Below, piece by piece: positions 9,912 to 62,338 of a stretch of 64,000 nt of DNA. This DNA is from Mytilus californianus (lineage: Eukaryota), in assembly GCF_021869535.1 (NCBI RefSeq), contig NW_026262668.1, positions 12,276,001-12,340,000 on the forward strand, read 5' to 3'. A model generated the notes under the pieces. That model did no database searches, had not been told where the DNA came from, and saw only the letters and a list, made by a program, of their open reading frames with translations. A program made the translations under genes and the position numbers. Numbering within the stretch: the first letter of the stretch is position 1; every line of letters starts with the position of its first letter.

Positions 9912-10702
9912 AAAGAAAAGAAGTTAGTTAGTAGTATCCTTTAACTTTACTTTCCCCTATATAGATGATGTTCTCTCACTAAATAATTCAAAATTTGGTG
10001 ACTATGTTGAACGCATCTATCCCATCGAACTTGAGATTAAGGATACAACAGATACAGTTAATTCTGCCTCATATCTTGACTTACATCTAGAAATTGACAA
10101 TGAGGTTCGGTTGCAAACAAAACTTTACGACAAAAGAGATGATTTTGGCTTCCCAATTGTGAACTTTCCATTTCTTTGTAGCAACATTTCAGCCGCGCCT
10201 GCATACAGAATATATATCTCCCTGTTGATACGATGTTCCAGGGCTTGTATTTCCTATCATACTTTCCTTGATAGAGGGTTGCTGCTCACAAGGAAGCTGT
10301 TAAACTAAGAGTTTCAAGTGGTGAAGTTGAAATCGTTCCGTCGTAAATTTTAGGGATGCCATCACGAGTTGGTTCACCGTTATGGAATATCCGTTTTACA
10401 CATGACCGAATGTGACCTACCGAATTAGACTTATTACCGAGTTTGTACTAATATGAGCAACACGACGGTTGCCACATTTGGACCAGGATCTGCTCACCCT
10501 TCCGAAACACCTGAGATCACCCCCAGTTATTGGTTGGGTTCGTGTTGCTCAGTGTATTTTTCTATGTTGTGTTTTGTGTATTGTTGTGTGTCTGTTTGTC
10601 TGTTTGTCTGTTGGTATTTTTCATTTTTAGCCATGGCGTTTGTCAGTTTATTTTCAACTGATGAGTTTGAATGTCCCTTTGGTATCTTTCGCCTCTCTTT
10701 TA
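9912..10702 (+). mobile_element. 5'-truncated Naiad-like PLE, second family (RT C-terminus plus 3' tail)
   Basis: YIDDVLSLNN, SASYLDLHLEID, TKLYDKRDDFGFPIVNFPFL, ISLLIRCSRAC; tail matches 50430-50719. Confidence 0.85.
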
Positions 10703-11727
10703 CTGTTTCGCTAAGGTGAGTGTAAATTTATTAACCCCTTCCTTCCCATCCCACCCGTAGACAACTTTGCCCTAACAAATAAAATTATGATTATTATAGA
10801 AATTAGTACAAATATAATTGTGCACGCTTTATAAATTCAAAAATCAATCTTCTTATATGCATTTTTATAGGGATAAGTAAGATATTTGCTACGAAGTTGC
10901 GTCCTGTTTGACCGAGATAAGTTATTATCGTAAGTTCATATATATTATCAGACAGCTACAAATGTGTACATGTATTTATTACAGTCATATACGTAAACAA
11001 TATTTACCACATTTAAAGGTAAGCATTTTCCACTCTCTAAAATAGTGTTGGCCATTTTGCTTTCGCATCATTACTTTACAGTCATGTTTTCATCAGTTTT
11101 CAAAAAGTTCTAAAAAATTCAAACAACACTTTATCAATTTAATGCGTCCGGATCGCCTTTCTGGATTAGCTTCAATCAGGAACGCTCAAAGCCGAATATT
11201 TGAAAGCCAATGATATATTTCAGATCAGTAATGCGCGTTTTTATTTCCTAACGTCCTCAAATCGAAACTTGCATTTTATATGTCTTTAAAGTCTTCGTTC
11301 AAAGTACGCTTTTAATGTATAACATTATAGTATGAGTTATCTTAGCTCTTCGAGTGATAACAGACAGGATCAAATGAACTAAACGTATAACCAGCTACAT
11401 TTGGGCTCAGTTTTAACCCCTGTAGGATTGTCCGAATATCTATCGTAAAATTTCAATGTTCTTAAACAAGTTCTACCTATTGTGCATGCATCACTGATCA
11501 TGTCTTTCTGACGTTATACCGAAAGCATTGTCATGGCCAGGAACTTGAATAAACCTGTGCATATGTTAGTAGAAGGATACTTAAAAAGCGCAATCTATTT
11601 TAATGAGATTACCTATATATTTTCTTATTTTCAGTAAGCTTTTTATGTTTATTTCATACACTTACAAATTTCACAAAAGATTTTACTTTTTTTTTAAATT
11701 GTATTACAGGAGTATCTTATTACAGCA

Positions 11728-39916: not shown

Positions 39917-42589
39917 CGTTGTCACATTTAACTTGTATTTCAAATTGCGTTATATAATGAGATTATGATAACTTGAATTGTAAAAATGGTAAATTCCTTT
40001 TTAAACAATATGTATTGAAATATTGAAAATTGATTATTTCAAATATATATAAGCACCTTAGATCAACGCAGTTTTTGATTGTTTTTGTCTTTTGTTTTCT
40101 TTGTAGTGTTTTGTGAATTTTTTTTTCACGCAGTTGTCATTGATCTCGACTTTGGAGTTTTGAATACCCCTTGGTATTTTCCGCCTCATTTTGAAATTTA
40201 TTACATCCAAGAATTTACCTGCGAATAAAGTATGTATTGCGAATAAAGAGGAATGGTGAAAAGACATCGACCAAATCGTAACAAATTTTGTGTTAATAAA
40301 AATCAAACATCTTGATATTGTCAGTTACTGAGAGTTTTTTCATATGAATCAAATATGCTTTTTTAACAAACTATTTAAGCCCGCTGCGTTTGTTTGCGCC
40401 TGTCCTAGTTCGGGAGCCTGATATTCAGTTGTTGTCGTTTGTTGATGTGGTTCATTGGTGTTGCTCGTTTCTCGTTTTTTTTATATAGATTAGACCTTTG
40501 GTTTTCCTGTTTGAATGATTTTACAGTAGTCATTTTTGGGCCCTTTATAGCTTGCTGTTCGGTGTGAGCCAAGGCTCTGTGTTGAAGGCCGTACTTTGGG
40601 CTATAATGGTTTACTTTTACAAATTGTGACTTGGATGGAGAGTTGTCTCATTGGCACTCATACCACATCTTCTTATATCTATAAATGGCACTTAAGGAAT
40701 AAAAAGTTTATATTCATCCGCGGTCTTCTTTTACAAAATTCCCTGCCAATACACCTCTTCTCCCTTTTAAGTCCTATTTAAAGGAAATATGCTAGGTTCA
40801 ACGTAAGGTCCCAAACTTAAATGATTTCATAAGTGTTCTCATACTAAAGTGAAACTTGTGATTGACATTTTTTAATTGTTGGATAGTTTATTCCTATGCA
40901 AAGGTAAAGAAAAGAAGTAAGATTCTATTTAAGATAGTGTCAAAAAAAGTATGAAGGAGAACCTATTTGTTTTATTATGGACTGCATGCTAATGAGCTGG
41001 AATTTTATTTTATGGTATATGTGGTATTGTTTTTAATCCAAAATGCATTAAACCAAGAACTGGCCTTTTATGACATTTTGTGACATTATTTTAACAAGAA
41101 GTTTTAAAAATCAAGTCGCTGAAGCATTGTATATTTTCAAAAGGTACGCACGGAGAAAAAAATGAGACGAAATGCAAGCAGATTTGATACGAAGGCTCTT
41201 TCTAGTCACACCATGTCCTTTAACACTATGGTTCATATTTTTATCGACCTATACGATATGTAATATTTTCGCTCTGTTACTTTAACGAAAAGTCAGTTAT
41301 CGATTTTAGGAAATTCGTCCGATCTGCATATCAAATTTTAATGTGATCTTTTTTAAGAGTGATAAGTTTTCTTACTTTCCTTTCTAAGGCAATGCATTAC
41401 TTTTCTTTTTAAGACAATGAATTAATAAAAGGTAAACAAGCTTGTAATAATTTGGATATAAATAAATGTTTTGGCAAGATATAAAGCCCTGCAAGGTTCA
41501 TATTATTCACTCTTATTAAGAAATCAATGCATTGAAACGTATATTAATGCATTAAAGCAGAGATTAAAGAGAGGTAGAGTGTTATTTGCTATTATTTTGA
41601 TGTAAATGGTTTACGTCGAAATAAAAAACTAACAGTTGTTTATATGATGGGTGCTGTAGATTTATTTTTCCCCAAAGAGGTATTGTTCACATGAATAAAG
41701 GCAGCAGTATTTTAACGATAAAACCATCCAGAAGATACAAACAAGGTTAAAAGCAAAAACCGAGGAAGTTGCATAAACTCCAAAAGGACCGAGACCAGAT
41801 GCGAAAGGGTAAGGTTCTCCTGTTATACATGCATTTAACCCCTCCCCCATGTGAATCAATACCCCCCCCCCCCAAAAAAAAAATGTAACAATTATGAATA
41901 GGACGCAACCAGTACATTTAAAGATTGGACAACCATCCAAGTATCTTAAGATCTAAGAAATCTGAAAGCATACCGTAAGCTACTTTAGACACATCGCATC
42001 GGTCAACCAGTTCATAACGGTGAACGTCAAACTTGAATTGTCGATTTCAATCGTTTGTCATCAAAACTCTATTGGATCAGTTTTTTGTCAGGAACACGTC
42101 CGTGTTAATGAATCTTGTTTTAACATAAAATATTAATTACAGTTTTATGACTCTTTTTTAAAGTCTAAAACAATATTCTGATTGTTCTTACCGGAGTTTT
42201 CGCTTTCAGCATTGAGTATCAATTTTAATCGGAAATTTCAAAAAGTTATAGTTAATCTTTTAAAAAATTATCTATCAATAAATGCTTGAAGTTCATATCT
42301 TTTAACTCTTGTCAATATACCAGGAAATTTTACAAACATAAAAAATTCAAAACCGGAAGGGGAAACAGTCATATAATATTAGAAAATTTCCGATCAATAT
42401 TTTATTTAACCGGAACATTTTAACTTGTAAAAATTTATATGGTGTTGTACAGAGGTATGTATATTTTTCAACTATTATAACTTAATTAATAAGATAATCA
42501 TGATACGATGCATGGTTAATCCATTCATAGTACAGAAAAGACTTTATCACAGTGTCTCTAAACATAACATTGATATTCATCTGACGAGT

Positions 42590-44688: not shown

Positions 44689-47600
44689 ATGGCAGATAAA
44701 CCAGCAGTTTTAACTAAATCACCGAAAAGTCCTTACAAACAACTAGAGGAACTTGTTTCGAAAAATCGTTTAAAGGTAAATGAAACTATGCAAATTACAG
44801 TATTCAAATACGAATTAATTATTTTTATCGAGAACGTTATTTGCGAGTCGACGTAAATAATGCTTCATTTCGTCGTATAATAACAAGGGATTTTCACAAG
44901 ATCTCATATCAAAGCAAGTGTTAAAGCCTTTAAAGTATTAGTTTTGATAAAAGAAATAACATGGCAGATTTGGACATAAAGTTTTGGCTGTTCGGATTAG
45001 GTCCTATTGACTTTAAAGGTCCCGAAGCTGGTGAACAGGCACATTTCCGCTTGAATACACGTTTATGTTTCCTTTCTGTAGCATATTATAATATTTCCTT
45101 CCTTTTTCAGGAATTACAATTACATAATATCAACAAATATACATCCAAACAACCATAAAACGATGCAAAAATCTACTATAAACAGCTTACTACTAAATTA
45201 TTTACATTTTAAGATTCTGTCTTTCATAAGCTGTCTGAAGTACAAAAAAGGAAAGAATGCAAACAAAAGTCCGACAAAGTGTATAGTTTTAAATATAGTT
45301 CCATTTGATAAAAAATCATATGATTAACCATGTACACTTTGTTCGATTAGACTCCGTTCCTTAAATTCAATTTTTGTCAGTTGTATTTGACTTGAATATT
45401 ATCATTGCTTCTCACTCGCTCTGTTGCTTGATAACATTTGATTTTGTCAGTTTTTGTAGACTTCCCCTTTTTGAATATACCTTGAAGTTTGGTTTTTTTT
45501 TTGTTATACTTTTATATTGACCAATCAAACAAAATAATAATTATAGATACCAGTGATAATGTACGTTATATTCCCAGTACTCAGTATTTATAGAGCTCCA
45601 ACTAAATCTTTAGAGAAAAAGAGAAGGCACAAAGAACATGAAGAATACAGTTCAAAACCAAAAGTTGACAGAAGACGTCAAACATGACCAAAAGAAAAAG
45701 GACGGGCAGAAAACAAGTCCGCGAATCATTACACAGAAAAATAAGGATTAAGCAACCCGAAATCTTTCTATTTTTCCATTTCTAAAAAGGGATTCAGATT
45801 AGCTTCACACTGGAAAGTTTAGCTGTTGCTGCTCTCCTGGTTAGTTGCACCCTTTAATATGCTTATGGCAAGACCTAGTAAATTTTAAAGTGTTATTGTC
45901 ATTTATAGCACTGGGTATCACCTACAATACAATCAGTACTATGGTAATGACATTATTTATAACATACTTATCTTAAGGATGTATTCTTCTGACGGTTTAG
46001 TCTTGTTGAAAACATGTGATACAAGTGAAAAGTATCAATGAATTTAAAAAAATATTTTATAATCAAACTTATCCCTGTGATTTACAATTGTTTTTGAGTA
46101 ATACAATTTTCAAATTTTATAACCAATTAAGTCAGTCTCATTAGTCAAAATGTTGAGAAAATGGGTGAGGGGTACAAGTAATGATTTTACTAGATACATG
46201 TACATCCCGTATCAATTTTTTCTTTTCTAATTTCTTAGATATGTATTTTTTCAATAATTTATAAGAAAGAAGTTGAAATAATATGCTTTTTGTTCTAAAA
46301 GAAAGAGAAAAATCCCAAATTTACAAAATTGACAACATGGTAAATTTGACACGAAAAAGCAACAAAATTTTATAAAACTTTCTTATATTAACACATACCC
46401 ATAGTTTTTTTAAGCTTACTTTATTCAGATTGGTCCACTTCATCTTCAGTGAAACTATGAAAAAAAGTTTAATTGATAATAGCCCAAAAATGGGTAAAAA
46501 TTGATGAAAAATGGGAAAATCATCAAAATTGGGTACTTTCAAATGGCTGTAGCAAAAGAAGAAGTGCACCACCATATGATTTTTTCTTCACCAATTTAAA
46601 AAGTAAGCTTCCAACTTCATCAGGTAAGGTAGACCTTGGATGAATGAGGTTGACAAATTATACTTTAAATGTGGGGACTGTGTCAAAACATTGATTATCG
46701 ATTTCAATAGGTAAAATTCAATTTGCGTGATGTTAACCAGGTATCTACACACTACTTGTTTCTTTTAAAATTAAATTAATTTAGAATAATCATTTTCTGA
46801 TATCAATGCTTATGATTATAGAACCGGAAAGGTGTACGTGTGTGCGCAGGGAGGGGGTTGGTTTTTCAATTATGCACTTCTAGATTTAAAAAAAAATCAC
46901 ATGATAAGCCACTTTGATTTTTTTATATTAATTACTGTTTTTCGAACATATCAATTTGTCACTCCACTACTGAACCTCGTCATGAAAACCTGAAAATGCA
47001 TGAAATATTTGTCACTGGACGAATAACATAAAACAATCAAGCAATCTCTACTAAACCCGCACAAAGCTCTACAGTCTGGTTGATTTTTTTTCCGGATGTC
47101 TCTATACACGCTTCCATTTACTTTGAGAGTTTTAAGCGCCTTATAGCGTGTTCCGCATATACCCGACACCCGAAAGATAATCAAAAGTTATTTTTTTACA
47201 TTATATTCTTTCTGCTCTTGGTCTTCATGTAGCTCTAAGTTTATGACGGCGATAGAGGGTAACGAATGGAGAACGACATGCGATACATTTTTTTTACCTG
47301 AAATGACAAAATCCTGGGGAAAATCTAATTCAATACCTGGCTTATTGAAGGCAGTAAATTAAAATATTGAGCATCATTCTGTTGTCCTAGGAAACTACTG
47401 CGGGTGAATTTTATATGATTCCTATTGTACACAAAAACCTGCGTAGGTATGGAATACCGGTTTGTGGAGTAAAATTGTGCCAGAGGCTCCATGTGTGATC
47501 TGTAAATGGCACGAACATTGCTGCCAATTGCCGCTAACGCTCTATTGTCGAATAAAAGGTATTTAGTGTATAGATTTCACAAAGAATCGGTATCTAAGAA

Positions 47601-50600
47601 TCTGTTTGTGCACTCGCAGCATGAACAGAAACTGCAAAGAGAAATATGCAGGAATATGTATTTAGGATATAAAACCGGAGAAAAAGGAGTCACATATTAC
47701 ATACATGCATTAGAGCGTATATGACAGGGAGTAATTTTTAGACTGTTTGAAAGGCTGGTCAAACGAGTCAGACAATTTCATACCTCAGAAATTGCAATGC
47801 GAAATGTTTTGAAACTTTTCATGAATATGTATAGGATGTCTTTCTTCAAAGATCCGTAGTTCGTTGGGTCGAACTAGTCACATTTTACATGAAAATGATA
47901 TAAGGGAAATTAAGCTATTCCAGAGTAGGTATTAACAGATCATTATGTATAAAATCATTTCCAGGGTCTAATAAGGCCTATCGAGGCCCTAGATGTGTCA
48001 TAGTGGTCATATGTGCAATTGTCAAAAAGTTTCAACCTCTGACAAAAAAACAGCAAACTATATCCAAAATGAATCCATAAGAAAAGTTGTACATTTTCAA
48101 TGTATATACATACATTGTGCAAAGTTTAAAAGCGCTTAGGTAAGGAGTTTATTACTCAAAACGGATACAACTCTTCTTCCGCTCGTCTGCACGTCCTTCC
48201 GCCTGCAACCTGGATTGCATCATATTATATGATAAGTCGATTCTGCATTGTGTGCAACCTGTCCAAAAGTTCTGACCTCGGGTAAACACACCTTTAAGTC
48301 AAATGGTCTGTCGCCATTGGTATCAAAATCGTAAAAAAATAGATTGGCAAATACATATTGCTTTAATTTTTAAGGGCTGGCGGGGGATTTGTTTCTCTCA
48401 TCCTTGACTACTTTTTCTCGGCTTTCTTCTGGATTTTATATCTTTTCTTCGGCACCCTTGCCTCCTATCAGTGTTCCAAAAGGAATAAATAGTTAGGGAT
48501 TTGTCATTTTTATTTATCGAGCATCACTGATAAGACATTTACTGTCGAATTGTGTATCTGGTTCAGAACAATTGTAACCGTCAATGTTATTCATTCCCCA
48601 CGAAATAATTATTATGGAATAATAATTTTGTTCCATAAGGAATATTCATATAATAAAATTGTAAATAATAAAGTTTTCAAAGGGACGTCTGTTATATGGA
48701 ACAAATATACGTGGACATCAGTACTTTGCGTTTTAAACACAAGATTCAATTGATTATTATACACAGGTAATTTAAATCTTTAAATTACTTTTGTGTTTTT
48801 ATACGATACCCGCATTTAAAGTCTAATTTGACAACCTCAGCGTAGAGTATATAACATTTCGTAACACGTCTACTTAGTCGCCTTTTGTTTAAATAGCTAC
48901 TCACATAATTAGATATTTAATATATTTATACATCCTGTGCTCCAAATGATTGGTTTTGAGCGTTGAGATTAATCCCAAAAACAAGTCGGAAGCACAGCAT
49001 TTTCAAAGTGTAATTTTCATTTCGACACGGAAAAGAGAACATGGTTGTCGCGAGTTTTGTCAAGGACATATTAGATCATATTAGCTTTCACATAATCATT
49101 GTTTTATAGTAGCAATAAAGCGTATCGAAGAAAATGTCTAATAAATTATTTAGAGATGCACAATCATAAATAATTTTATTTTTCGTGAACAGATTGGATT
49201 CAGGAAAGGATGTAAAAATAGCGTTAGACATTTTTTGAAAAGTTTTATTGATAAAGCTTTCAAATCAACCAAAAGAATATATGCATGTTTTATTGACTTT
49301 AAAAAAGCTTTTGACACTATAAATAGAGAGGCCCTGCTACACAAACTTGCTGAATATAACATAAAGGGACCTTTTTCAATATTTACAAAGAAATTCTATT
49401 TGTAGTTTAAGTCCCTGAAGGCATTACTGAGATATTCCCTTCCACAGTTTGAGTATAACAAGGCTGTATTTTTAGCCCTACCTTATTTTATTTTTATATA
49501 AATGACTTAACCTCCATTTTTGATAACTCATGTGATCCTGTAACATTACATAATATAAAATTGTCTAGTCTTTTATATGCTGATAACTTAGTATTAATAT
49601 CAGAATCTTGTGCCCCTCTTCTTGCCGACTTGTTTCTTTATTATTATGAGGCTGACTTTCCTGTTGACAAAACTTTGAATTTGTCGTAAAAATAAGGATT
49701 TTCGTATCCCAGGAATAGATTACCTTAGCTCTATTTGGCACAACTTTTTGGAATTTTGGGTCATCAATGCTCTTCAACTTTGTACTTGTTTGACTTTATA
49801 ACTTTTTTTATCTGAGCGTCACTGATGAGTCTTATGTAGACGAAACGCGCGTTTGGCGTATTAAATTATAATCCTGGTACCTTTGATAACTATTTATACA
49901 GGAACTTCTTAGGAAGAAAGATAAGAAGTTAGCAATATCCTTTTACTTTGCGTACCGCTATATAGATGATGTTCTCTCACTAAATAATACAAAATTTGGT
50001 GACTATGTTGAAGGAATCTATCCCATCGAACTAGAGATAAAGGATACTACAGATACAGTTAAGTCTGCCTCATATCTAGAAATTGACAATGAGGGTCGGT
50101 TGAAAACAAAACTTTACGACAAAAGAGATGATTTCAGCTTCCCAATTGTGAACTTTCCATTTCTATGTAGCAACATTCCAGCAGCGCCTGCATACGGAGT
50201 ATATATCTCCCAATTGATACGATATTCCCGGGCTTGTATTTCCTATCATGATTTCCTTGATAGAGGATTGCTGCTCACAAGGAAGCTATTAAACCAAGAG
50301 TTCCAAATGGTGAAGTTGAAATCATCCCTTCGTAAATTTTACGGACGCCATCACGAGTTGGTTAACCGTTATGGAATAATCGTTTCACAGATGATATCGG
50401 ATATGTTCCTTATGTCGTAACTACAATACCCTTCCCTTTTCACGAATGTGACCTACCGAATTAGACTATTTACCGGATTTGTAATAACATAAGCAACACG
50501 ACGGGTGCCACATGTAGAGCAGGATCTGCTTACCCTTCCGGTGCACCTGAGATCACCCCCAGTTTTTGGTGTGGTTCGTGTTGCTTAGTCTTTAGTTTTC

Positions 50601-53600
50601 TATGTTGTGTCATCTGTACTATTATCTGTCTATTTGTCTTTTTATTTTTGACCATGGCGTTGTCAGTTTGTTTTCGATCTATGAGTCTGACTGTCCCTCT
50701 GGTATCTTTCGTCCCTCTTTCAGATGGATTACAAAATTGTCTAAACAAGTTGAACACTTACTGTAAGAAATGGAACTTGACCGTCAATCTTGACAAGACA
50801 AAATGGATGATATTTAATAAAAGTGGTAAAAAGCTTACTAAAGACAATTCATTCTGAATAATGAAATAATTGAATGTTGCACAGAATACAAATATTTAGG
50901 TTTATCATTCAAGCCATCAGGAATTTTCACTAATGCTGTAAATCTCCTTTGTATAAAAGCTTTAAAGGCATTGTTTTGTATTAAAAGAATGCTTTATTCA
51001 GATAAGATCGATATTTTTTTCCCAAATGAAACTTTTTTCATTTATCTTGTGTTACTATATTGTAGTGAGATATGGTCACTAAATATTGTGAAGAACAACA
51101 AAACTCTTGAATCTCAATATTTATCAATTGAATCAGTAAAACTCCAAATCAAATTTGCAAAAAATCTACTTAACGTAAATTCAAAGGCAGTAAATATAGC
51201 TGTATTAGATGAATTGGGAATGTACCCTATTGGTATACAGGACCTAAAGTCTTCTGTAGGATTTTATATTGCATATCTTAAACTCAAATGAAAAAGAGTC
51301 TTTATTATATAATGTTTATAAAAATTATAAGCAGTAAAATAATGGATTTGCTTCCAAAATTAAAATGCTACTATCTAAATTGAATTTCCCTCATGTGTGG
51401 GAAAATCAATGTACCTTTTCTAAAAAACGATTACTTTCAGCCCTATCGAAGAAGCTCAATGAAAATAACAATATATATTGGAAAACTTGATGATAATTCA
51501 ATAAATGGAAATAAACTAAGAACCTACAGAAAATTTAAAGTAAAGTATGAACTTGAAAAGTACTTTTTATTGAATTTAGATAAAAATGTTACAAAAAAAT
51601 ATGCAAAAATAAGAATAAGTAATAGTATGCTAGCTATTGAATGGTCGATACAATAAAACCGCCTTAGAAAATAGAATATATCCCTTATGCCATAAAGAGG
51701 TGGAAGATGAATTCCATTTTATCATAACATGTACAGAACTTAATACATCTAGGATCAAAATGTTTAAAACTGAAATTTCTAATATTGTTCCCTGTTTTAA
51801 TTCAATGAGTATTTTCTTGCGAAGAATGTGATATATTAATTACCATTGTTAACAGTATAAGTGAAATGTATAATGAGAGAAACAACTATAATGTCAATAC
51901 ATTAACTGTGTATGATTCATGACTAATATTATAATATATATAATCAAGATATTTGAAATGATACCTTTATAGAGGAGGCATGTTGTCAAAAATAGTATTG
52001 TAATAAATATTAACATTTTATTTCAATGCTACATGTTTGTATTGTTTTCTGTCTATCGTTTTGTTATTTATATGTTTTTCTTTAGTAACAATCCTATTGT
52101 TTGGATTTTAAACTAATAAAATTCTTTTTCTTATTCTTATCCCTTTTTCCAAAAATGTGGTCTTTATTCTTCCAAAATTTAACTTTTGTATGACATTTGT
52201 ATGACAAATATACATTTGGTTAAATTTCATGCATTAATTTCTATACATGTGTAGTTGCAGTGTGATATCAATCTACAAGAAAATGAGTTTGTTGCCAAGC
52301 TTATCCTTGAAGATGAAGAATACTCTGGTTGTGGAGCTAATAAAAAAGCCGCAAAGGATGATGCCGCCAATGATGCCTTAATAAATACAAAGTATCATGA
52401 TGAAACAAAAATTGAAAAGACAACAATTACTAAGTTAAACGAACTTTGTCAAAAAAAACACGCAGGTAAGTATTTATAAAACAGGTCAGAATAGAATAAA
52501 GTTTTAATTTTGATGGTATAGCATCTGCAATATATCTTCATCAGTTTCCCTGAAAACTTTGTATCTTTATCGTATCGACAATGTACGAAAAACATCATAT
52601 AGTATCGTCATTCCCTCCGCCTATATCATCCTGCTCAGTCGCTTCGTAATTCCTGAATCACGGCTTTGAGACGTGAGCAAGCATTTTCAGCGCCGTCACA
52701 ATGCCTGAGGAGAAGTTATTAGCGACATCACAATGTGTGAGATGTTATCAAGCTTACTTTCGTCAAGGTAAAACTGTCTAAGGCAGCGGGGAAAGATAAA
52801 CAGATTATCGGGTTTTCTACGTATAATTATCGTAAAATATCAGCCGCTCGATACAATGCGAAGTTTTTTGCTAGTTTGCTGCGTTCACTCTCCAGAAAGG
52901 TTCACACAGTGGCTCAAAGCTGATATTTTACGATATCAATGTGTAGAAAACATAATCTATACGTATCTATTTAAAGGTTTTCTTGTTTAAAAGCAGTTGT
53001 GTATTGGCTTGTAGAAAAAAAGTATCAAGACATAATTTTCCTTCACAGTATTTCGTTTAAGAAATAAATACCTGGTCAAAGAGATATACTGTCAGAAGTT
53101 GAAGGCTAATGAGTTGGTTGACCAATATTTTTCCGCATGTTTTACGAATTTTACGAAACTAGACAACTTTGTAAAAAGGGAATAAAAAAATTAAATCCCG
53201 AGGATTATAAACGATCGCTAACGAGTCAAACCATTTTATTTCGAAAGTGAAATAAACTGTTTCCTTGATTTTGTTTTAAAGAATTTTGTCAGAAAATACT
53301 CGCACGTCAACCAATCTAAGTCTATAGTTAGAAGGCAACATAGAGTACCGAGGTTCAAAACAATGAAACCCCTTTTGTATATTCCGAAAAAAGAGTCAAA
53401 ACCATAGGGAATCACAAGAAACTCAACAGGCCAAATGAAGTACATATGGATTATGCCGGGTGTCAGTCTTTAGATTTCTATATAGTGTTCTGTGGACTGT
53501 TGTTTGTTTATTCGCCGTTTTTCGTGTTTTGCGTTGTCAGTTTCTCCCCGACTTATGAATTTTTTAAAGTACCCATGGTATCTTCTGCCTTTTTTATAAA

Positions 53601-56600
53601 CTGTAAAGTTACGAAAAATCATCATTTCAATGACAGTTCATGTCAGTAGAGAATTGTTGACTATTGTGCTGGTGATATTCTCGGGGACAAACAGCGTTCA
53701 CCAACAACTCCGAAGTTATCAAAACTAATCATAGATACCAGGATTCTAATTTATTAGCAGGATCTGCTTACCCTTCCGGAGCACCTGAGATCACCCCAAG
53801 TTTTTGGTGGGGTTCGTGTTGCTCAGTCTTTAGTTTTGTATAATGTGTTTTGTGTACTATTGTTTGTCTTTTTCTTTTTTAGCCATGGCGTTGTCAGTTT
53901 ATTTTCGACTTATGAGTTGAGTTTGAATGTCCCTTGGTATCTTTTGCCCCTCTTTTATTACACCGGGTTTGCGTTTCGTCGACATAAGACTGGCGCTAGA
54001 ATTAAATCAGTTAGAAGGCCAAATGCGAAAGCTAATCCAGACAAAGAAAAATGCCACTATAGCATACAACCGGTACACCTTTACATCAGCCAATCTGACA
54101 GCTGAAATATGCTGCAAAAGTATGATTATGATACATAGTAATAATTATTATACTAAAAGTAATAATGATGATAACGAAGAAAAACATGTTTTCCCATAGA
54201 AATGTGTGTCAGATAACCAAATTGCTTTCAGTTATCTAAGTAATGATAACCAATAATATATCCTTTCCAATTCAATTACTTCAACACGACACGATCTCCT
54301 GTTGGTTATAGTTTACAAGAAAATATTTCTGGCGTATAGTTACAAAAGAAAACGTAGTGTGTTGCGTGGTATTTTTCTACAAATGTACAAACGAGGAAAA
54401 TAACAAGCTAAATGAGACTTATGTGAATTAAGTTGATGTTGTTGTGGAAAATAACCCCTATCGATCAATCTCATATTATTTTATCTACTTGCTGCACATA
54501 ACGTATGTATACATAGGAATAGATTGTATACCGTATATGATTGTAGAAAGACATGAACAAGTCAAAGAAAAATACTACCATCAAATGATATGCAGCAGAG
54601 ATTACCAAAGAAAACGAATTTATTGATGTCTTTACCTTAGTTGCCAGAAGAGATATTTTTCAGTGTCCTCAAAAGAAGTAATTCAACTGATGGTATGATT
54701 CTTCAACTACAATTTTGGTTTCATAATATATATAGATAAACCTACATACAAGGAAATACTGCTTGCATTGATAATTGCATTAATCTTTGTATAAACTTGT
54801 TCATTTTGCAGATAAACCATACCTATGAGGAAACTTACAAGGAGGAAGATGAATTCGTCTGTAGATTGATAATTACTCATGAAAATAATGGTATTGTCAA
54901 AGACGAAGAGCATGTAGGAAGAGCAAAATCAAAGAAAGATGCAAAGCACGATGCTGCTTCCCGAGCTCTTAGGAAAAGTAACATTCTTCTTAATTCTTCT
55001 GCTAAAGGTAACTGATCTGTTATACATGTATGTCTTATGATGGGAAGATGACTTTAGTAATAATAGTTATTGAATGGGGAAAATAATTATATGTACCCTA
55101 TCCCTCTTCAGGTATTTTTTACTCCTACGACCTTCTTCTTTGTTTGTCAGGAAAATTTACCCTTTTATAACACACTCACCCAAAACAGCTACATGAACAA
55201 ACAGGACATTAAAAACTACCCAAATTCATTTTAGTCAACTTTGCCTGAGACAGTTGGAACGATAGTTTTTTAATAATTTCTTAATTTGTCTATTGAAAAA
55301 AGTATTAACAATAATACTGAACTGTAAGGTTAATTCAAAAAAGGGGAAGTCCATAGCACCTGACAAAAATCCAACGTTGGACTATAACAACTAACGAGAC
55401 GAATGGAAAACAACTATTATATTCCTGAGTTGATACCAATGGTTTCATTTGGTAAAGTTGAAATCATAACTTCGAAATTTTCAAAACAGACATACTGATT
55501 TGGTAAACCGTTAACGTATATCTGTGTCACAGATGAACATAGATATGTTACACTTGTCACAGCCACATTACCGTACGTTTTTATTCGATTGTAACGTATT
55601 TGAATGTGACTTATCGCCGATGTTTTGTTACCATGAGCAACACAAAATGTTCCATTATAAAGACAAGAACTGTTAACTCTCTCTGATCACGTCTTTTAAC
55701 CCCATTGTTTTGAGGGTTTCGTGTTGTTCAATCTTTACTTTTTTGTGCACTACTGTGTTTTGTGGACTCATTTGACTTTTCGTCATTTCACTAGTAAATG
55801 ATTTTAGTCTGCAAAGGTCATTTTGATCTTGACAACATCCGAAAAGTCTGAACAATACATTATTAAGTCACGTTCAGGCTTTCTGAAAATTAAGGATGTT
55901 GTTCATGTGTACAATTGAATATTAACTACTTGACAGTCTGAACATAGACTAAACAGATCTTAATTGACTATAAACGAATTGTTGGAACAGTACTGAATTT
56001 ACCGCAGTGGATAAATCTAAAATTGAAGACTAATTAAAAGACTGAAAATTACTTACTAATTTGTTGCATAGTCTTTAAAGAACTATTAAGATCAAAATCA
56101 CTGTCTTGGATAAAAAAATGTTTACTAGTGTATGTCTTTTTTGTCATAGCATTGTTTGCTTGTTTTACTTATGTTATTTAAATGGCCTTTTGGTATATTC
56201 TCCCTATTTTTTTTTGTCGATTGTTGAAACCGTGCGTTTCCCTGGAGATGTCTTGTTACGTTTATCTGGTGTCCTGTTATAGTCTGATTAACATTTACTC
56301 TCAAATCTTCTATTATTTCTATTCACAAATGTTGTTACTTTCTATGATATGTGATTTCCATAATGCACATGATGACAATTCTATCAGTTTTAGAATACTT
56401 TCAAATTTTTATATTACAGATTTAGCTTGTGCAGATGGATCATATGCTTGTATTGGAAACCAGACTGGTTATGTTCTTATTATTAACTTTAGAAAAGATA
56501 GAGACTGTAAGTTAAAGTAGTATGGGGGTTTACACAAAAAATACCGATTTTTCCATCATTTGCCAAGATTTAGTTTATATCAAGCTATTTTCAAAAATGT

Positions 56601-59600
56601 TGTTTATATCGAGCTATTTTCAAAAATGTAAATTATATCGTGCTATTTCCCAACATGTAGTTTATAAAGTGCTATTTTCAAAAATGTTGTTTATATCGTG
56701 CTTTTTACAAAATTTTTTTTGTTTGTTTATGCCCTTAGCTCCTCCGGGGAGCATAGGTCATTGACGAAAACTTGTTTAAATCGTGCTATTTTCCAAAACG
56801 TTGTTTATATCGTGCTTTCTTCAAGAATGTAGTTTATATCGTGGTATTTCCAATATTCCAGTAAAATGTATAGGTAATCGATTTTGAAACTACAGATAGC
56901 AACAATTTACACATTTTTCAAGGATTGTACAGTGAAAAAGTATAATGGTGTGAAAGAAAAAACCGAAATTTAATATGAAAGTTAGCTATAAGAAATTATT
57001 ATAGAAAATTAAAAAAAATTGACGTCATCGTCTTTTTTCTTGCTATAGTACAAAAATAGAACAATGTATTGTAGATTCCTTTGAAAGATTAAATTACCTG
57101 AGCTATTTCCCCTTCTGATGCTAATTAAAAAAAATGAACCAATCTTTTAATACTCTTTATTTATAAAAACAGCCCTAATTATAGGCTAAAATCACATACT
57201 TTTCCATTTAAACGAAAAGCATTTAATATGAATTGCATTGCTCCCTCAAAATTTGCTAATTTAATAAAAAATCTTGTTATAACTATTTTACTACCTTAGA
57301 TGGCAGAAGACTCTCATATTGCCTGTAATATGTGTATGTATTAATTTTCAATTATATAAAATGATAACTGGCTATGACAAACCTTTCATTTAAGAATTGA
57401 GTATTTTTTTCCTGTGTTATGTCCTTTGTCTGAGCGCCAACTGAGTCACACGTTGTCATGTGTATCTCTTAAATAAAAAGTGATAGAGATACCAAGAGTA
57501 CTATCAAAATTCGTAAGTCAAATAAAAACAGACAACATCATGTCCTAAAAGAAAACAACGAAAAAAAAACATAAAAAACCCAAAAATTACACAATAACCT
57601 TCTAATGCGAAAATATGTGGTAGTGTTCGGTCTTCTTTCTTTAGAACAATGCTTTATAAAAAAAATATTTTTAGTGATCGTAATGTGGTCTTAAACGTGG
57701 TCCACAACTATAATTAACTCACACTTTTGAATAGAAAAATTGTTCTGGTTAATCTATTCATTATAAATCATGGGATGTTTCGAAATAACCACCATGTTTT
57801 TCTAAGAGATTTGAAGCACACAATTTCTTAAAAACCTTAAAGATACCAAAAAGTCATTTTTTTTAATTTCAGGGGCAGACAAAGACGAAGAAAATATAAT
57901 TGAATTAATGAGCGGTATATTGAAATTTGAATATTCGGTTGTGGCAGACCCAACAAAGGCGGAGCTGGTCAATATTCTAGAAAATATTTCAAGCAATTTA
58001 AATGGGAATTATAAATCGTATTATTGTTTTATGGTATTTTTGATGGCTCATGGTAGTCAGGTATGTATTAATCTTTTTTCATTGACTTACATATACATTT
58101 ATATTTATATTTGTTAAAATGAGAAGACAATTGGTTTTAAGGTAGATGGGGATATTAATAAAAGAAGATATAATTTCTTTATACTTTACATAGGTGTTGA
58201 TTTTCTCATGCCGTTTTCAAAAATATAATAAAAGTATGGGTCATATAGCTTTGTATTAAGCCACATATTGTGTGAAATTGTTAGATTTAGAAAGGAATGT
58301 AAATGGAAAAGTCACTATTGTGTGAATAGAAAGAAAACAAAATGATAGAATTTTAAAATAAATAAATGAGAAAAAGCTCTTATAATGTGTTTTCATGATA
58401 TAAAAAGAAAAATCGAAATCAAAGTACTCGTTTACTTACTACATAACAAAATGTTTACATGCGAAAGTATGACCGTGCCACGTTTTGGACCCGTGAATTC
58501 TAAAATCAAAAAGTATCATCAATCTACCAAATATCAACCTTCATATGTCCATAAGAAATATGATTCTGTCAGATATCAGGATTTACATTTTGAATTTGGT
58601 CTTACATATTTGCATTAGGGCTTCAAACCTCTTGCATTTAAGTGCAAAACTGCAAAACATTTTGTCTTATTTTGAAATATTGCCATTGATATATTTAAAT
58701 ATATAAGCAAAGGATGTATCCAAAAAGATATTTCTTAAAATATGTATTGTAAAAATGGTTATGTGTGTAAAATATCCTTTTTGGTAAGGTCTTTGATCAT
58801 ATTCATGTTGACCAAAACTATACGTGAAATTACCATATCAGGTTAAATACGTCAATTTCAACATGTTTATGACTTCATACGGACATCATATGTGAGCTAT
58901 CTTCCACTATCAAGATTGTGTCTGTTAAATGAATAATAAAAGTTTCGTGACAATGTTTATCGCAAATATCCCATTTAACCTGAAATAAAGGAAACCACAG
59001 GTACAGTTAAGTCTGCTCAATGTCTTGATTTATACCTATAAATTCACAATGAATTTCCGAGTAATGAAATCCAAGCAGCGCATATATATATGGAGTATAT
59101 ATCTCCCAGTTGATACGATATTCCAGTGCTTGCGTTTTCTATCATTATTTTCCTTGATACATATTTGCTTCTTACAATGTTATCCCTTCGAAAAGTATAA
59201 GGACACCGTCATGATTTGTTTGACCGTTATGAAAGAACTGAAAAATAGATGACCACGGATATGTTCCACTTGTCGTAATCCGAATTTTAATGGTTGCCAA
59301 TAGTGGAGCAGGAACTACTTACTCTTTCCTTTTTGTCCATGGTGTTGTCTGTTTTATTTGATATTTGTTTTTTGCTTACCCTTTTGGTGTCTTCTCCATC
59401 TTTATTTATGAATGACCATCTTTTGTCTGAAATGTAGTACAAATTGTATCAGCTGTTACCGTCTCTTTTAACTTATACTGATATCAATTATTTACATTAG
59501 TTTGGAGTCATAACTGCTGATAAAGGTAAAAAGAAGATAACTATTTCTGTGGATGAAATAATGGAATTGTTTAAAAATGATAAAATACCAAATTTTGTAG

Positions 59601-62338
59601 GTAAGTATGAACAAAAATGTATCTCTTAATTTTTTAATAAGACCATGCCACTGCTGGTGAACTAGACGTCCCCGACGGTATTGCTAACTGAGTAGCCTAT
59701 ATTTTTTTTTATATTGGGTTAATTTCATTCACTGACATATTCTATAATACGGGTCCAATTCTGACACAGGAAGTTAAATTACGGTGAGATATATATATAT
59801 TGAAATCATAGTAGAGCAAACTGCAGTGAAACAGCAACACAGTGATACAAAAATCATAAGACATATTTAGGATCATTTGGTCACCAATAATAAACAAGAG
59901 TCTATATAAAATGTCAAGCTCTAAAATCCCCTCGAGTCTTAAAAATATATATTTCAAATTGCAGTAAACTAGCTTTTCTTCGTTTCTTAATCATTGATTT
60001 GTGTTTTATTCTAAGATCACTCACTGTATTGGTTCCGAAACTAATAATCGTTGTTCAAGGTTTCTAATTATGTGCACACATGTATAGATAATACAACTTT
60101 TAAATCGATGAATACAGACTACATGCTTGTATTTCTATAAAAAAATAGATTTGTTTAAATACAATTATCAATAAAACTGGATACAAATGTATGGAAGTGA
60201 TATGATAGTTTTGAAACTATAACTGACTGCAAGTACATTTATGCTACATAATTGAAGTCTATTTGTATTGTTCTTTGTTGTTCTGCTACAGCGAACATTT
60301 TCCACATTGAAATTTTAATATAGAATATTAACATTTTGAATCTGAAGGAAAAACTATAAACACAAAACTTCGGCAGAAAATTTGAGCATCCCGATCTCCA
60401 TTGAAACAAATGAGGTGAACAGTTTAACACTTAAGTCTGAGAGAACATGAATAATTTATTAGTTGTTTTTGTCTTAAAGTAGCGTTGGCGATCATACCAC
60501 ATCTTCTTTTTTATATTCAGTTACTGTTAGATCGGTAATGTGTGTCTTTTGTCTTTAACTCTGATAACTGTTTTATGTGCTTCGTGTCGATCTGATGAGT
60601 TAAGCCGCGAAACTGATTTTCACAGTTCGTTCTTATGCTTTATTTTGCTCTTGCACCATTATCCCAGGTTAGAGGGAGTGTTGAAATCTCACAAACACGT
60701 TTACCCCTGCCACATTTTACAGGTGCCTCTTTTCCAAGTCATGGGCCTGTAATTCAGTGGTTGTCGTTGGTTGATGTCTTTCGTATTTGTTCTACATTTA
60801 TTGTTTTATCATAAATCAGGCCTTTGGTATTTTCGTTTAAATTGTTTTACATTTTGTATAGCTCACTATAGGTATGGGTTTTGCTCAGTGTTGTATGCCG
60901 TATTATGACCTATAATTGCTTAACTCCGCTTCATTTTAACTCTGTTGGATTGTTATCTCTTTGACTTATGTCTTTATTTTTATATAGTGTTTACACAGGA
61001 TAATAAGTATTAACCGAGAAAAAATAAATCCATCAGACTAATCACTTTCAAACATTTATAGTTTTGCAAATCATAAAAGAATTATCATGTTTTAAAGGTA
61101 AACCTAAAATGTTCTTCATCCAAAGCTGTAGGGGAAAATCAATCCAGGATACTTTCGTTCAGCCAGATGATGACGACGATGACACGGTAGAGAGAATATC
61201 AGCACCAACTGATGCAGACATTCTTATTGCTTATGCAACTACTGAAGGTATAATGTGTATTGTATGATTATTCCACTTTGTAAATATATTTTGTCATTAT
61301 TCCTTTGCACAACAGTAAAAAGATCTACATTGAACAAAAAAAAAAAAAATACAAGTCGAAGAAAGGAAGACAATACTATGGCAATAAAAAAATCAGAAAA
61401 ATACAATCATTAGTCTACTAAAAGCAATACATTGAAATCTAAAGATAAGGCAACACACACAACCAAAAATTGAAGTTAACTCAAGTGCTCCGGAGTGTTG
61501 GCCAGTTCCTGTCCGATAATTGACATCCATAGTGGTACTCAAATTCCTAACATTTATGCATGGCCGATTTTGAAGTTTTCAAATGAAAAACATAGTTTTT
61601 CAGAGCAAATCATAGTTTTTCTGAGCAAATCATAGACAAGCATGTTAACAAAAGGAAACATCACATACATTAAAAAGAAAGTACAACATTGAAATCCAAA
61701 GCAAATACAATACCAACTCTACGATATATATAAATAGGGTTGAACTCAAGCATTAAGTTCCTATTCTAACGGGTAATGAAATCGAAAAATCAATAAAACT
61801 TCACCACTTTTAAATCGTCATAGGGATATCAGGATCGCTTTTTCTTATATAAGCATTTACTATGATAAAAGACAATAAAACGATGCATTTTGCGCAAAGA
61901 AATATTGTTTTATGGATTCACTTATTTCACATACAAATTGGTGTTTTGGTATATTCAAGCAAATTTAGAGTGCACATCAGCTACCTACTATTTTGAAAAT
62001 AGATTGAATTCGGATACAGCGCTGTTTAAGCTCATGACGCTATATTAATTTTATCTTTCTTAGAATTATAAATGTAAGAAAATAAATAAACTACTTCATA
62101 ATGTATATTTTCAGGTTATAAAGCTTTTCGACACAAGAATTTTGGTTCTATCTTTATCTATGAATGTATAAAGAAGTTCAAGGAACAATATAGTAAGACA
62201 CATCTAGAAGAAATGATGATTGATGTCAAAGCAGCACTTGCGCTAGGCTCTGTAGATAAGACAAAGAAGCATGTACAAATGCCTTGCACATGGAGCACCC
62301 TTACAAAAAGATTTTTCTTTGTACCCACTGAGTCATAA
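44689..62338 (+). CDS. Caspase with two N-terminal dsRNA-binding domains (dsRBD-dsRBD-caspase), ~413 aa, 8 coding exons
   Basis: Exons 44689-44775, 52255-52465, 54812-55007, 56420-56506, 57873-58060, 59501-59600, 61098-61247, 62115-62338. dsRBD1 KSPYKQLEEL...SGCGANKKAAKDDAANDAL; dsRBD2 TKLNELCQK...VGRAKSKKDAKHDAASRAL; caspase GYVLIINF, FLMAHG (His 58049-58051), GKPKMFFIQSCRG (Cys 61127-61129), DADILIAYATTEG, GSIFI, QMP..WSTLTKRFF. All junctions are phase-compatible except exon 2/3 (off by 1). The exon 2 acceptor could be 52261, and further upstream exons are not excluded. Confidence 0.85.
48521..48564 (+). ncRNA. Degenerate hammerhead, family 3
   Basis: gcatca CTGATAA gac atttact gtc GAAT tgtgta TC tggttc; two core changes. 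Confidence 0.5.
49608..50719 (+). mobile_element. 5'-truncated Naiad-like PLE (family 2) inserted in the LINE
   Basis: CAPLLADLFLYYYEADF / IQELLRKKDKKLA, YIDDVLSLNN, MKTKLYDKRDDFSFPIVNFPFL...ISDMFLMS, followed by the 3' tail. Confidence 0.88.
49661..49896 (+). mobile_element. Family-2 retrozyme fragment with hammerhead (49816-49859) inserted in the Naiad RT
   Basis: Matches ~38128-38359; gcgtca CTGATGA gtc ttatgta gac GAAA cgcgcg TT tggcgt (intact core, GUU triplet). Confidence 0.85.
53755..53955 (+). repeat. Solo 3' tail of the family-2 Naiad
   Basis: gcaggatctgcttacccttccggagcacctgagatcacc matches 50518-50719. Weaker relatives occur near 16000-16200, 17660-17770, 18940-19070, 34050-34250, 40060-40200, 45640-45850, 53450-53600 and 59000-59400. 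Confidence 0.8.
56574..56855. repeat. 29-bp minisatellite (~8 copies) interrupted at ~56718-56771
   Basis: Consensus tttatatcgtgctattttcaaaaatgttg. Confidence 0.8.
60480..60960 (+). repeat. Dispersed repeat related to the Naiad-1 tail
   Basis: aggttagagggagtgttgaaatctcacaaacacgtttacccctgcc resembles 8160-8240; the 3' part resembles 40380-40650. Confidence 0.6.

What the first reader, a model, noticed from the sequence alone, without database searches (positions are those of the whole stretch)
44689..62338. PKR-like architecture with a caspase effector: two dsRNA-binding domains fused to an intact caspase
Seen: exons 1-3 encode two dsRBD-like modules, each with the helix-1 (L.EL.QK-like) and G.xxKKxAKxxAA..AL signatures, spliced to a full caspase with His-Gly and QSCRG catalytic residues. 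Known: tandem dsRBDs in PKR drive dimerisation on long dsRNA, and initiator caspases activate by induced proximity. Inference: this is a one-protein dsRNA sensor-executioner that couples viral or retroelement dsRNA to death or cytokine processing without an adaptor. I recall DSRM-bearing caspases being noted in bivalve caspase surveys, so the architecture may not be new, but the mechanism is little characterised. The ORF track misses the gene because it is split over 17.6 kb.
Basis: partly seen in the sequence, partly recalled or inferred. Interest (0 to 1): 0.85.

Follow-up and report, generated by a model that had tools for sequence, protein, structure and literature searches.

The report
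Mussel caspase with two dsRNA-binding domains
This is a real, transcribed mussel gene in which two double-stranded-RNA-binding domains sit in front of an intact caspase, but the same design is already published for oysters and its proposed role as a dsRNA-triggered death switch is still untested.

Summary
On the + strand, 44689-62338, eight GT-AG coding exons plus a 5'UTR exon ending at 42454 encode a 413-aa protein. It has two dsRBDs and a caspase with the His-Gly, QSCRG and S1-pocket residues. Pfam matches every domain above its cut-off. The AlphaFold model gives two alpha-beta-beta-beta-alpha modules that match TRBP, R2D2, Loquacious, Staufen and PKR dsRBDs. RNA contigs and raw reads join dsRBD exon 3 to caspase exon 4, and a 1419-nt cDNA contig from a sister taxon lies across all exons, so this is one gene.

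Corrections:
- The exon between HG and QSCRG is at 59501-59600.
- Exon 7 starts at 61098, not 61062.
- The assembly has A8 at 52451-52458 where all RNA contigs have A7. As assembled, the frame stops at codon 105.

The architecture is not new. Oyster Cg3C-like A/B (2021) and CgCas1-2D (2025) are orthologues, and Mytilus proteins are 86-87% identical. The family forms one clade in oysters and mussels.

The PKR-like dsRNA activation remains a hypothesis, already raised in 2021. For it: conserved KKxAK and helix-1 residues, and an invariant VQPD linker site. Against it: no GPxH loop, acidic to neutral domains, and a catalytic domain most like caspase-3/7. The oyster paper tested LPS, glucan and mannose, not dsRNA.

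The parts
42414..42454 (+). 5'UTR exon (3' part). It ends at a GT donor after 42454; the transcription start is not determined.
   Evidence: cDNA contig L002 nt 2-42 aligns here at 90% identity, and the sequence reads ...TGTACAGAG|GTATGT.
44689..44775 (+). Coding exon 1. The ATG is the first base after the acceptor. It encodes helix alpha-1 of dsRBD1 (MADKPAVLTKSPKSPYKQLEELVSKNRLK).
   Evidence: L002 is 100% identical here.
52255..52465 (+). Coding exon 2. It encodes the beta-sheet and helix alpha-2 of dsRBD1 (NKKAAK), the linker, and helix alpha-1 of dsRBD2 (KLNELCQ). It contains the A-run at 52451-52458.
   Evidence: Pfam dsrm 34.8 bits. RNA contigs begin aligning at 52253, which puts the acceptor AG at 52253-54.
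52451..52458 (+). A8 homopolymer in the assembly where the RNA has A7. It shifts the frame, giving a stop at codon 105 as assembled.
   Evidence: Contigs from X1 and X6 (same species label as the assembly) and X2 stop aligning at 52457 and carry CAC+GCAG (tables 5, 5c, 8). This is the only indel between the spliced genome sequence (1243 nt) and the L002 CDS (1242 nt).
54812..55007 (+). Coding exon 3. It encodes the beta-sheet and helix alpha-2 of dsRBD2 (SKKDAKHDAASRAL) and the linker.
   Evidence: Pfam dsrm 25.8 bits. The joint to exon 4 is seen in X21 reads and in X1, X6 and X2 contigs.
56420..56506 (+). Coding exon 4. It encodes the linker and the first strand of the caspase domain (QTGYVLIINFRKDRD), including the S1 Arg.
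   Evidence: Joints 55007/56420 and 56506/57873; alignment to caspase-3.
57873..58060 (+). Coding exon 5, caspase p20 up to the catalytic His-Gly (MAHGSQ).
   Evidence: Pfam Peptidase_C14 27.6 bits, profile positions 23-83; three X21 reads cross the acceptor.
59501..59600 (+).
   Evidence: tblastn with homologues; L002 is 99% identical; GT-AG borders.
61098..61247 (+). Coding exon 7. It encodes GKPKMFFIQSCRG (catalytic Cys), the intersubunit linker with VQPD followed by an Asp run, and the start of p10.
   Evidence: Pfam Peptidase_C14 36.3 bits; junction fixed by L002 and homologues; Q311, P312 and D313 are conserved.
62115..62338 (+). Coding exon 8, caspase p10 (GYKAFRHKNFGSIFI ... QMPCTWSTLTKRFFF) and the TAA stop. 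The 3'UTR continues to at least 62466.
   Evidence: Pfam Peptidase_C14 34.6 bits, profile positions 172-233; L002 aligns to 62466.

Best explanation
Shown: this is the mussel orthologue of the oyster 2xDSRM-caspases (Cg3C-like A/B, CgCas1-2D). It is one transcribed gene of nine exons encoding a 413-aa zymogen. Two dsRBD folds take the place of a CARD or DED prodomain, ahead of a catalytically complete, Asp-specific caspase domain. Inferred mechanism: the prodomain binds double-stranded RNA, mainly through the conserved KKxAK lysines and helix alpha-1 of dsRBD2, with dsRBD1 helping. Several zymogens lined up on one duplex are brought together. They dimerise and cut themselves at the invariant VQPD site of the intersubunit linker, and probably between prodomain and p20. 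The freed protease then cleaves death or inflammation substrates such as GSDME or other caspases. The extra A in the assembled A-run is most likely a homopolymer error or a null allele of the sequenced animal, not the normal state of the gene.
For: Identity and architecture: Pfam finds dsrm twice plus Peptidase_C14 on the exons and on the 97%-identical P0045 (dsrm 66.7 bits in two stretches, Peptidase_C14 141.7 bits). One transcript: joints and contigs, and the full-length cDNA L002. Fold: both N-terminal modules are alpha-beta-beta-beta-alpha with pLDDT 75-88. Foldseek matches tandem dsRBDs of TRBP with siRNA, R2D2, Loqs-PB, NF90 and PKR at E 2e-8 to 8e-4. VIA-align gives Z 9.6-12.1. Catalysis: R192, H253, G254, Q298, C300, R301, G302 and R345 are invariant in 11 orthologues that are only about 50% identical overall, and they align to the caspase-3 catalytic and S1 residues. 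dN/dS against the sister-taxon cDNA is 0.14 for the caspase part. RNA-contact motifs: K59 and K63 (dsRBD1), and K84, E92, Q95, K140, K141 and K144 (dsRBD2), are invariant or nearly so across oysters and mussels. Processing site: Q311, P312, D313 and D315 are conserved, and p16 and p28 fragments were reported for CgCas1-2D (PMC12122919). Prodomain swap: the 2xdsRBD caspases form one clade (SH-aLRT 97) inside bivalve long-prodomain caspases, some with DED-like N-termini.
Against: No dsRNA binding or dsRNA-dependent activation has been measured for any family member. Region 2 (the GPxH loop) is absent from both domains in mussels; the dsRBD2 loop is acidic (EEDEF). Both domains are acidic to neutral in all orthologues (pI 5.0-8.4, net charge -5 to +1), whereas well-studied RNA-binding dsRBDs are basic (my own knowledge). 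The top structural matches of dsRBD1 include the protein-binding type-B domains Staufen dsRBD5, TRBP dsRBD3 and Loqs dsRBD3. The catalytic domain is closest in sequence to effector caspase-3/7 (E 1.6e-24). Those enzymes are constitutive dimers activated by an upstream cut, not by proximity. dN/dS of the dsRBD part is higher (0.56, on only 13 changes). The oyster orthologue was reported to bind LPS, glucan, mannose and bacteria and to inhibit GSDME cleavage (PMC12122919). As assembled, this copy is frameshifted.
Confidence: 0.45

Rival explanations
1. The DSRM prodomain is a broad binder of bacterial surface patterns rather than an RNA sensor. On this reading the protein works as reported for oyster CgCas1-2D: after binding LPS or bacteria it associates with GSDME and restrains its cleavage, which dampens NF-kB and histone-mark driven cytokine expression.
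For: This is the only experimental work on an orthologue (PMC12122919). By ELISA, the 2xDSRM fragment bound LPS, glucan and mannose better than the caspase fragment. The protein co-localised with Vibrio, its mRNA rose after Vibrio or LPS, and the best peptide substrate was YVAD. The near-neutral charge of the domains does not favour a pure polyanion binder.
Against: A dsRBD fold has no known carbohydrate- or lipid A-binding site (my own knowledge). In that study the caspase fragment also bound the same ligands, which suggests low specificity. The residues conserved over the oyster-mussel split are the canonical RNA-contact ones. dsRNA was not included as a competitor or ligand.
Confidence: 0.15
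2. The dsRBDs act mainly as protein-protein modules (type-B-like). They could mediate homodimerisation of the zymogen, docking to Dicer or another dsRBD protein, or localisation. On this reading RNA is not the trigger. Activation would come from an upstream caspase cutting the linker, as for caspase-3/7.
For: The best structural matches of dsRBD1 are Staufen dsRBD5 (Z 12.1), TRBP dsRBD3 bound to Dicer (Z 10.7), Loqs dsRBD3 (Z 10.7) and the STAU1 RBD5 dimer (Z 10.6), all. The beta1-beta2 loop is short and lacks GPxH, and the overall charge is acidic. The catalytic domain is closest to effector caspases. A sister clade keeps one dsRBD-like module whose KKxAK has decayed to RSLEEAK.
Against: Type-B dsRBDs normally lack KKxAK (my own knowledge). 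Here that motif is kept in both domains in the window's protein, and K140, K141 and K144 of dsRBD2 are nearly invariant. dsRBD2 matches RNA-bound domains best: Xlrbpa with dsRNA at Z 9.6 and rmsd 1.5, and the RNase III dsRBD. The Z differences among the top rows are within about 1-2 units, so they are effectively tied.
Confidence: 0.2
3. In the sequenced animal this copy is a non-functional allele. The A8 run is real, and the transcript would encode only 104 residues (dsRBD1 plus one helix) and be subject to decay.
For: The assembled sequence has A8, and the spliced frame stops at codon 105. RNA from the same study as the assembly (X21) gave no reads over 52400-52599 and only about 1-1.6x depth on the exons. 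Mussel genomes are known for high heterozygosity and gene presence/absence variation (my own knowledge).
Against: All three RNA contig sets that cover the run have A7, including X1 and X6 with the same species label as the assembly. The rest of the gene shows no other defect, and it has dN/dS 0.26 against the sister taxon. One-base homopolymer miscounts are the commonest error of long-read assemblies (my own knowledge). This rival concerns the allele only, not what the gene is.
Confidence: 0.15

Closest known systems
Crassostrea (Magallana) gigas CgCas1-2D, also called Cg3C-like A/B: the 2xDSRM-CASc caspases (PMC12122919; PMC7836458)
   Same: It has the same order of two N-terminal dsrm domains and one caspase domain. 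Its length is similar (425 aa against 413), and it has the same QSCRG pentapeptide. Oyster family members P0041, P0044 and P0003 are about 50% identical along their whole length, and they form one clade with the window's protein.
   Different: It comes from a different order (mussel, not oyster). dsRBD1 keeps a full KKxAK (NKKAAK) where oysters have NKTxAK. Mussels have lost the His of the beta1-beta2 loop that oysters keep (H-x-E-G-F). This genome appears to have a single locus, whereas C. gigas has two neighbouring genes.
Mytilus trossulus 'caspase-14-like isoform X1' (P0046) and the M. edulis unnamed protein (P0047)
   Same: They are orthologues, 86-87% identical to the 97%-identical proxy P0045, with the same Pfam architecture.
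   Different: They come from another species. NCBI's names for family members (caspase-14-like, -3-like, -2-like) are automatic and contradict one another.
PKR (EIF2AK2)
   Same: Two N-terminal dsRBDs precede a catalytic domain whose family is switched on by dimerisation. The tandem dsRBD model matches the PKR dsRBD structure 1qu6 (Foldseek E 7.9e-4).
   Different: The effector is a cysteine protease, not a kinase. There is no sequence kinship beyond the dsRBD fold. The closer dsRBD relatives are the Dicer partners R2D2, TRBP and Loqs. dsRNA-driven activation is not shown here.
Human caspase-3/7
   Same: They are the best sequence match of the catalytic domain (E 1.6e-24). The His/Cys dyad and the Arg-Gln-Arg S1 pocket are retained.
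   Different: Caspase-3/7 have short prodomains and no nucleic-acid-binding module. Here the prodomain is about 165 residues long, and the nearest bivalve outgroups have DED-like N-termini.

Membership tests
Caspase (Peptidase C14A) | Match to the Peptidase_C14 profile above the curated cut-off, covering both p20 and p10 | tested here: met
   Exons 5, 7 and 8 score 27.6-36.3 bits against a cut-off of 21.4. P0045 scores 141.7 bits over profile positions 2-233.
Caspase (Peptidase C14A) | Catalytic His-Gly and the QxCRG cysteine | tested here: met
   MAHGSQ and QSCRG are in the window. H253, G254, Q298, C300, R301 and G302 are invariant in 11 orthologues.
Caspase (Peptidase C14A) | Asp-specific S1 pocket (the Arg, Gln and Arg equivalent to caspase-3 R64, Q161 and R207) | tested here: met
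   The alignment to caspase-3 places DRDW on SRSG, QSCRG on QACRG and AFR on SWR. R192, Q298 and R345 are invariant.
Caspase (Peptidase C14A) | Proteolytic activity and autoprocessing at linker Asp | not testable with these tools
   A conserved VQPD-D site is present. Activity is reported only for the oyster orthologue (PMC12122919).
dsRBD (PF00035), RNA-binding type A | Profile match above the cut-off for two separate domains | tested here: met
   Exon 2 scores 34.8 bits and exon 3 scores 25.8 bits against a cut-off of 23. P0045 has two stretches totalling 66.7 bits.
dsRBD (PF00035), RNA-binding type A | alpha-beta-beta-beta-alpha fold | tested here: met
   The secondary structure is H15-25, E30-37, E40-47, E50-56, H59-73 for the first domain and H86-96, E100-110, E113-124, E127-137, H140-154 for the second, with pLDDT 73-89. 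Z is 9.6-12.1 to solved dsRBDs.
dsRBD (PF00035), RNA-binding type A | Region 3: the KKxAK motif at the start of helix alpha-2 | tested here: met
   The window has NKKAAK and SKKDAK. K59, K63, K140, K141 and K144 are at least 90% conserved.
dsRBD (PF00035), RNA-binding type A | Region 1: the conserved Glu (and Gln/Lys) of helix alpha-1 | tested here: met
   KQLEELVSK in the first domain and KLNELCQK in the second. E92 and Q95 are conserved across the family.
dsRBD (PF00035), RNA-binding type A | Region 2: the GPxH loop between beta1 and beta2 | tested here: not met
   The loops read DINLQENEF and TYEETYKEEDEF, with no Gly-Pro-x-His. Oysters keep only a His in dsRBD1.
dsRBD (PF00035), RNA-binding type A | Measured binding of A-form dsRNA | not testable with these tools
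   No paper among the 33 that hold both 'DSRM' and 'caspase' reports it for this family.
Bivalve 2xDSRM-caspase family (Cg3C-like / CgCas1-2D) | Two dsrm domains plus one CASc domain on one polypeptide, encoded by one transcript | tested here: met
   RNA joints link the dsRBD and caspase exons, and cDNA L002 encodes all of it.
Bivalve 2xDSRM-caspase family (Cg3C-like / CgCas1-2D) | Groups with the oyster members in a tree of catalytic domains | tested here: met
   All 13 two-dsRBD rows are one side of a branch (SH-aLRT 97, quick IQ-TREE).
PKR-like dsRNA-activated enzyme (functional analogy only) | dsRNA-dependent dimerisation that switches on the catalytic domain | not testable with these tools
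   Only the architecture is analogous. The caspase domain is more like effector caspase-3/7 than initiators, which weakens the analogy.

The most novel reading that the evidence does not exclude
The protein is a true adaptor-free antiviral death switch. Long dsRNA from a virus or retroelement lines up several zymogens through their dsRBDs. Proximity alone triggers VQPD autoprocessing, and the protease then executes apoptosis or GSDME pyroptosis. That would be a protease counterpart of PKR, invented once in the common ancestor of oysters and mussels by replacing a DED-type prodomain.
Probability: 0.3. Interest if true: 0.75.

Novelty: new member of a known kind. Interest (0 to 1): 0.35.

Why it matters
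If the dsRBD prodomain really senses dsRNA, this family would be the first caspase known to read a nucleic-acid danger signal directly, without an inflammasome or death-domain adaptor. That would bear on antiviral defence in farmed oysters and mussels, for example against herpes-type viruses. As it stands, the window adds three things. It gives a well-supported gene model for a mussel orthologue. It shows that the RNA-contact residues and the VQPD site have been kept since oysters and mussels split. And it flags a one-base assembly problem that would make automatic annotation truncate or mis-splice the gene. The 322-aa Mytilus galloprovincialis model P0001, which skips the equivalents of exons 3 and 4, shows how easily such mis-splicing happens.

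Tried and rejected
1. My first guess for the missing exon between HG and QSCRG was 58124-58193 (KTIGFKVDGD...). Homologue tblastn and the cDNA place the exon at 59501-59600 instead.

2. The cDNA and all homologues join ...NFV-G-KPKM at 61098.

3. I looked for alternative donor/acceptor pairs that would keep exons 2 and 3 in frame with A8. None exists in the sequence. The RNA shows A7 instead.

4. I looked for paralogues. tblastn of all exons against the window found only the gene itself. Six-frame searches of the whole 1.65-Gb assembly with exon 2 and with P0001 found no second dsRBD-caspase locus; the other caspase loci found were only 42-45% identical.

5. A search for relatives of the dsRBD region alone (P0045 residues 1-165) returned only Mytilus orthologues. 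This says nothing about shorter or longer proteins.

6. The full-length AlphaFold model was poor in the caspase half (pLDDT mostly below 50 with an 11-sequence alignment). I did not use it for that half.

7. Rfam found nothing in 42000-64000.

8. The earlier scan notes near this place concern other features of the window, not this gene.

9. I did not run complex prediction. A caspase homodimer prediction would not discriminate between the readings.
Full report
**What is there**

The window is AT-rich animal DNA (GC about 0.31) from a 1.65-Gb assembly of 175 contigs. Between 44689 and 62338 on the + strand, short open pieces translate to dsRBD-like and caspase-like peptides.

Pfam scored each exon on its own:
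- dsrm in exon 2: 34.8 bits, cut-off 23.
- dsrm in exon 3: 25.8 bits, cut-off 23.
- Peptidase_C14 in three further exons: 27.6, 36.3 and 34.6 bits, cut-off 21.4. Together these cover profile positions 23-83, 107-168 and 172-233.

**Gene model**

A homologue search with the last exon and then with full-length hits gave P0045. This is a 413-aa protein from a public transcript assembly. Its 1419-nt cDNA contig (L002) aligns to the window as nine blocks.

| Exon | Coordinates |
|---|---|
| 5'UTR exon | ends at 42454 |
| Coding exon 1 | 44689-44775 |
| Coding exon 2 | 52255-52465 |
| Coding exon 3 | 54812-55007 |
| Coding exon 4 | 56420-56506 |
| Coding exon 5 | 57873-58060 |
| Coding exon 6 | 59501-59600 |
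| Coding exon 7 | 61098-61247 |
| Coding exon 8 | 62115-62338 |

- All introns are GT-AG.
- The spliced genome sequence differs from the cDNA CDS by 28 substitutions and one indel. That gives 13 amino-acid differences, or 97% identity.
- It also read 36 intronic bases upstream of exon 7 as coding.

**RNA evidence that it is one gene**

I laid one raw RNA-seq run from the assembly's own study (X21) and three sets of RNA contigs on 52200-58199.
- The joint between dsRBD exon 3 and caspase exon 4 (55007/56420) appears in X21 and in X1, X6 and X2.
- The joint 56506/57873 appears in three X21 reads and in X1 and X2.
- One 1211-nt contig of X2 runs through exons 2-5 and beyond on both sides.
- X21 first mates lie on the minus strand, as expected for a + strand mRNA in a standard stranded library.
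- Expression in X21 is low, about 1-1.6x with 6% of the run read.

That test is answered: they do not.

**A flaw in the assembled sequence**

The assembly has eight A at 52451-52458.
- With the only available donor (G|GTAAGT after 52465) and acceptor (CAG before 54812), exon 2 ends in phase 1 and exon 3 starts in phase 0.
- The frame therefore stops at codon 105.
- Every RNA contig over the site stops matching at 52457 and continues CAC-GCAG, which means seven A. These are X1 and X6, which carry the same species label as the assembly, and X2 (tables 5, 5c, 8). L002 shows the same.
- With A7 the frame is open for 413 codons.

I could not tell an assembly miscount from a real null allele.

**The protein**

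*N-terminal half*
- With an alignment of 12 orthologues, the N-terminal 166 residues fold as two alpha-beta-beta-beta-alpha modules with pLDDT 73-89.
- Foldseek matches tandem dsRBDs of TRBP with siRNA, R2D2, Loqs-PB, NF90, MLE, DGCR8 and PKR.
- The exhaustive aligner gives Z 9.6-12.1.
- By sequence, dsRBD2 is nearest to R2D2 dsRBD1 (E 1.8e-4).

*Caspase half*
- It aligns to human caspase-3 at E 1.6e-24, with the S1 Arg, His-Gly, QSCRG and the p10 Arg in place.
- The full-length model was poor in this half, so I did not use it there.

**Family and history**

- Proteins with the same Pfam architecture come from Ostrea, Saccostrea, Crassostrea, Magallana and Mytilus.
- Mussel orthologues are 86-87% identical to P0045, and oyster ones about 50%.
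- In a tree of catalytic domains, the 13 two-dsRBD proteins form one clade (SH-aLRT 97).
- Next to them is a small clade with a single decayed dsRBD-like module.
- Further out are bivalve caspases, several of which have DED-like N-termini.
- The fusion therefore looks like a single old event in which dsRBDs took the place of a death-fold prodomain.
- This genome seems to hold only one such locus.

**What is conserved**

- All catalytic and S1 residues are invariant across the 11 aligned orthologues.
- The linker motif V-Q-P-D-x-D is also conserved (Q311, P312, D313, D315).
- In the dsRBDs the hydrophobic core is kept, together with the canonical RNA-contact positions of regions 1 and 3: K59 and K63 in dsRBD1; K84, E92, Q95, K140, K141 and K144 in dsRBD2.
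- The GPxH loop is absent. The dsRBD2 loop is acidic.
- Both domains have pI 5.0-8.4 in all species.
- dN/dS against the sister-taxon cDNA is 0.14 for the caspase part and 0.56 for the dsRBD part. The latter rests on only 13 changes.

**Literature**

- Vogeler et al. [quoted passage not shown] They placed them in the executioner caspase-3C group and suggested a role as viral detectors.
- A 2024 survey of Mytilus coruscus lists DSRM among caspase domain combinations (PMC10967218).
- A 2025 paper characterised CgCas1-2D, a 425-aa protein with the 2xDSRM-CASc layout and QSCRG (PMC12122919). It reported binding of LPS, glucan, mannose and bacteria, p16 and p28 fragments, a slight preference for YVAD, and inhibition of GSDME cleavage. 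It did not test dsRNA.
- Among the 33 papers that hold both 'DSRM' and 'caspase', none reports a dsRNA experiment on this family.

**Verdict**

- The architecture is real, intact at the RNA level and under purifying selection. It is also already known, so the window adds a mussel orthologue with a clean gene model.
- The PKR-like mechanism is a reasonable hypothesis that others raised before. The sequence evidence is mixed.
- I put about 0.45 on RNA binding by the prodomain being the functional trigger. I put about 0.3 on the full adaptor-free, proximity-driven model.
- The main rivals are a protein-interaction role for the dsRBDs, with activation by an upstream caspase, and the broad bacterial-pattern binding reported for the oyster protein.

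Noticed in passing
window 49235-51831 (intron 1): This is a decayed non-LTR retrotransposon on the + strand. It has RVT_1 fragments at 49235-49405 (E 2e-5) and 50648-50857 (E 7e-4). It is split by another insert that carries an unannotated 106-aa ORF at 50100-50420 with no Pfam match.
   Followed up: partly
window 53600-54000 (intron 2); a smaller one at 55200-55600: This is a dispersed, heavily transcribed repeat. Summed RNA-contig word depth is about 5,000-20,000, and raw RNA reads reach 60-100x on both strands. About 99% of reads run on into unlike sequence, so they come from other copies. Rfam has no match in 42000-64000.
   Followed up: partly
window 61062-61097: This intronic stretch lies just before the real acceptor of coding exon 7. 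It is open in frame (LQIIKELSCFKG) and resembles the end of exon 6 (KIPNFVG). It looks like a partial duplicate or a decoy acceptor (TTTATAG at 61055-61061). It is absent from the cDNA.
   Followed up: yes
window 52253-52260: There are tandem acceptors six bases apart (TAG|TTGCAG|). The RNA contigs and P0045 use the upstream one, which adds Leu-Gln. Use of the downstream one would give an in-frame two-residue shorter isoform.
   Followed up: partly
proteins P0004, P0048, P0049, P0053 (transcript assemblies, 323-343 aa): This is a sister clade of caspases with only one dsRBD2-like module. Its KKxAK has decayed to RSLEEAK, and Pfam no longer detects it. It may be a natural 'RNA-blind' comparison set for the family.
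   Followed up: partly
protein P0001 (Mytilus galloprovincialis, 322 aa): The annotated model jumps from the start of dsRBD2 straight into the caspase domain, so it lacks the equivalents of exons 3-4. It is only about 57% identical to the window's protein, so it is either a divergent paralogue or a mis-spliced prediction. No counterpart locus was found in this genome.
   Followed up: partly
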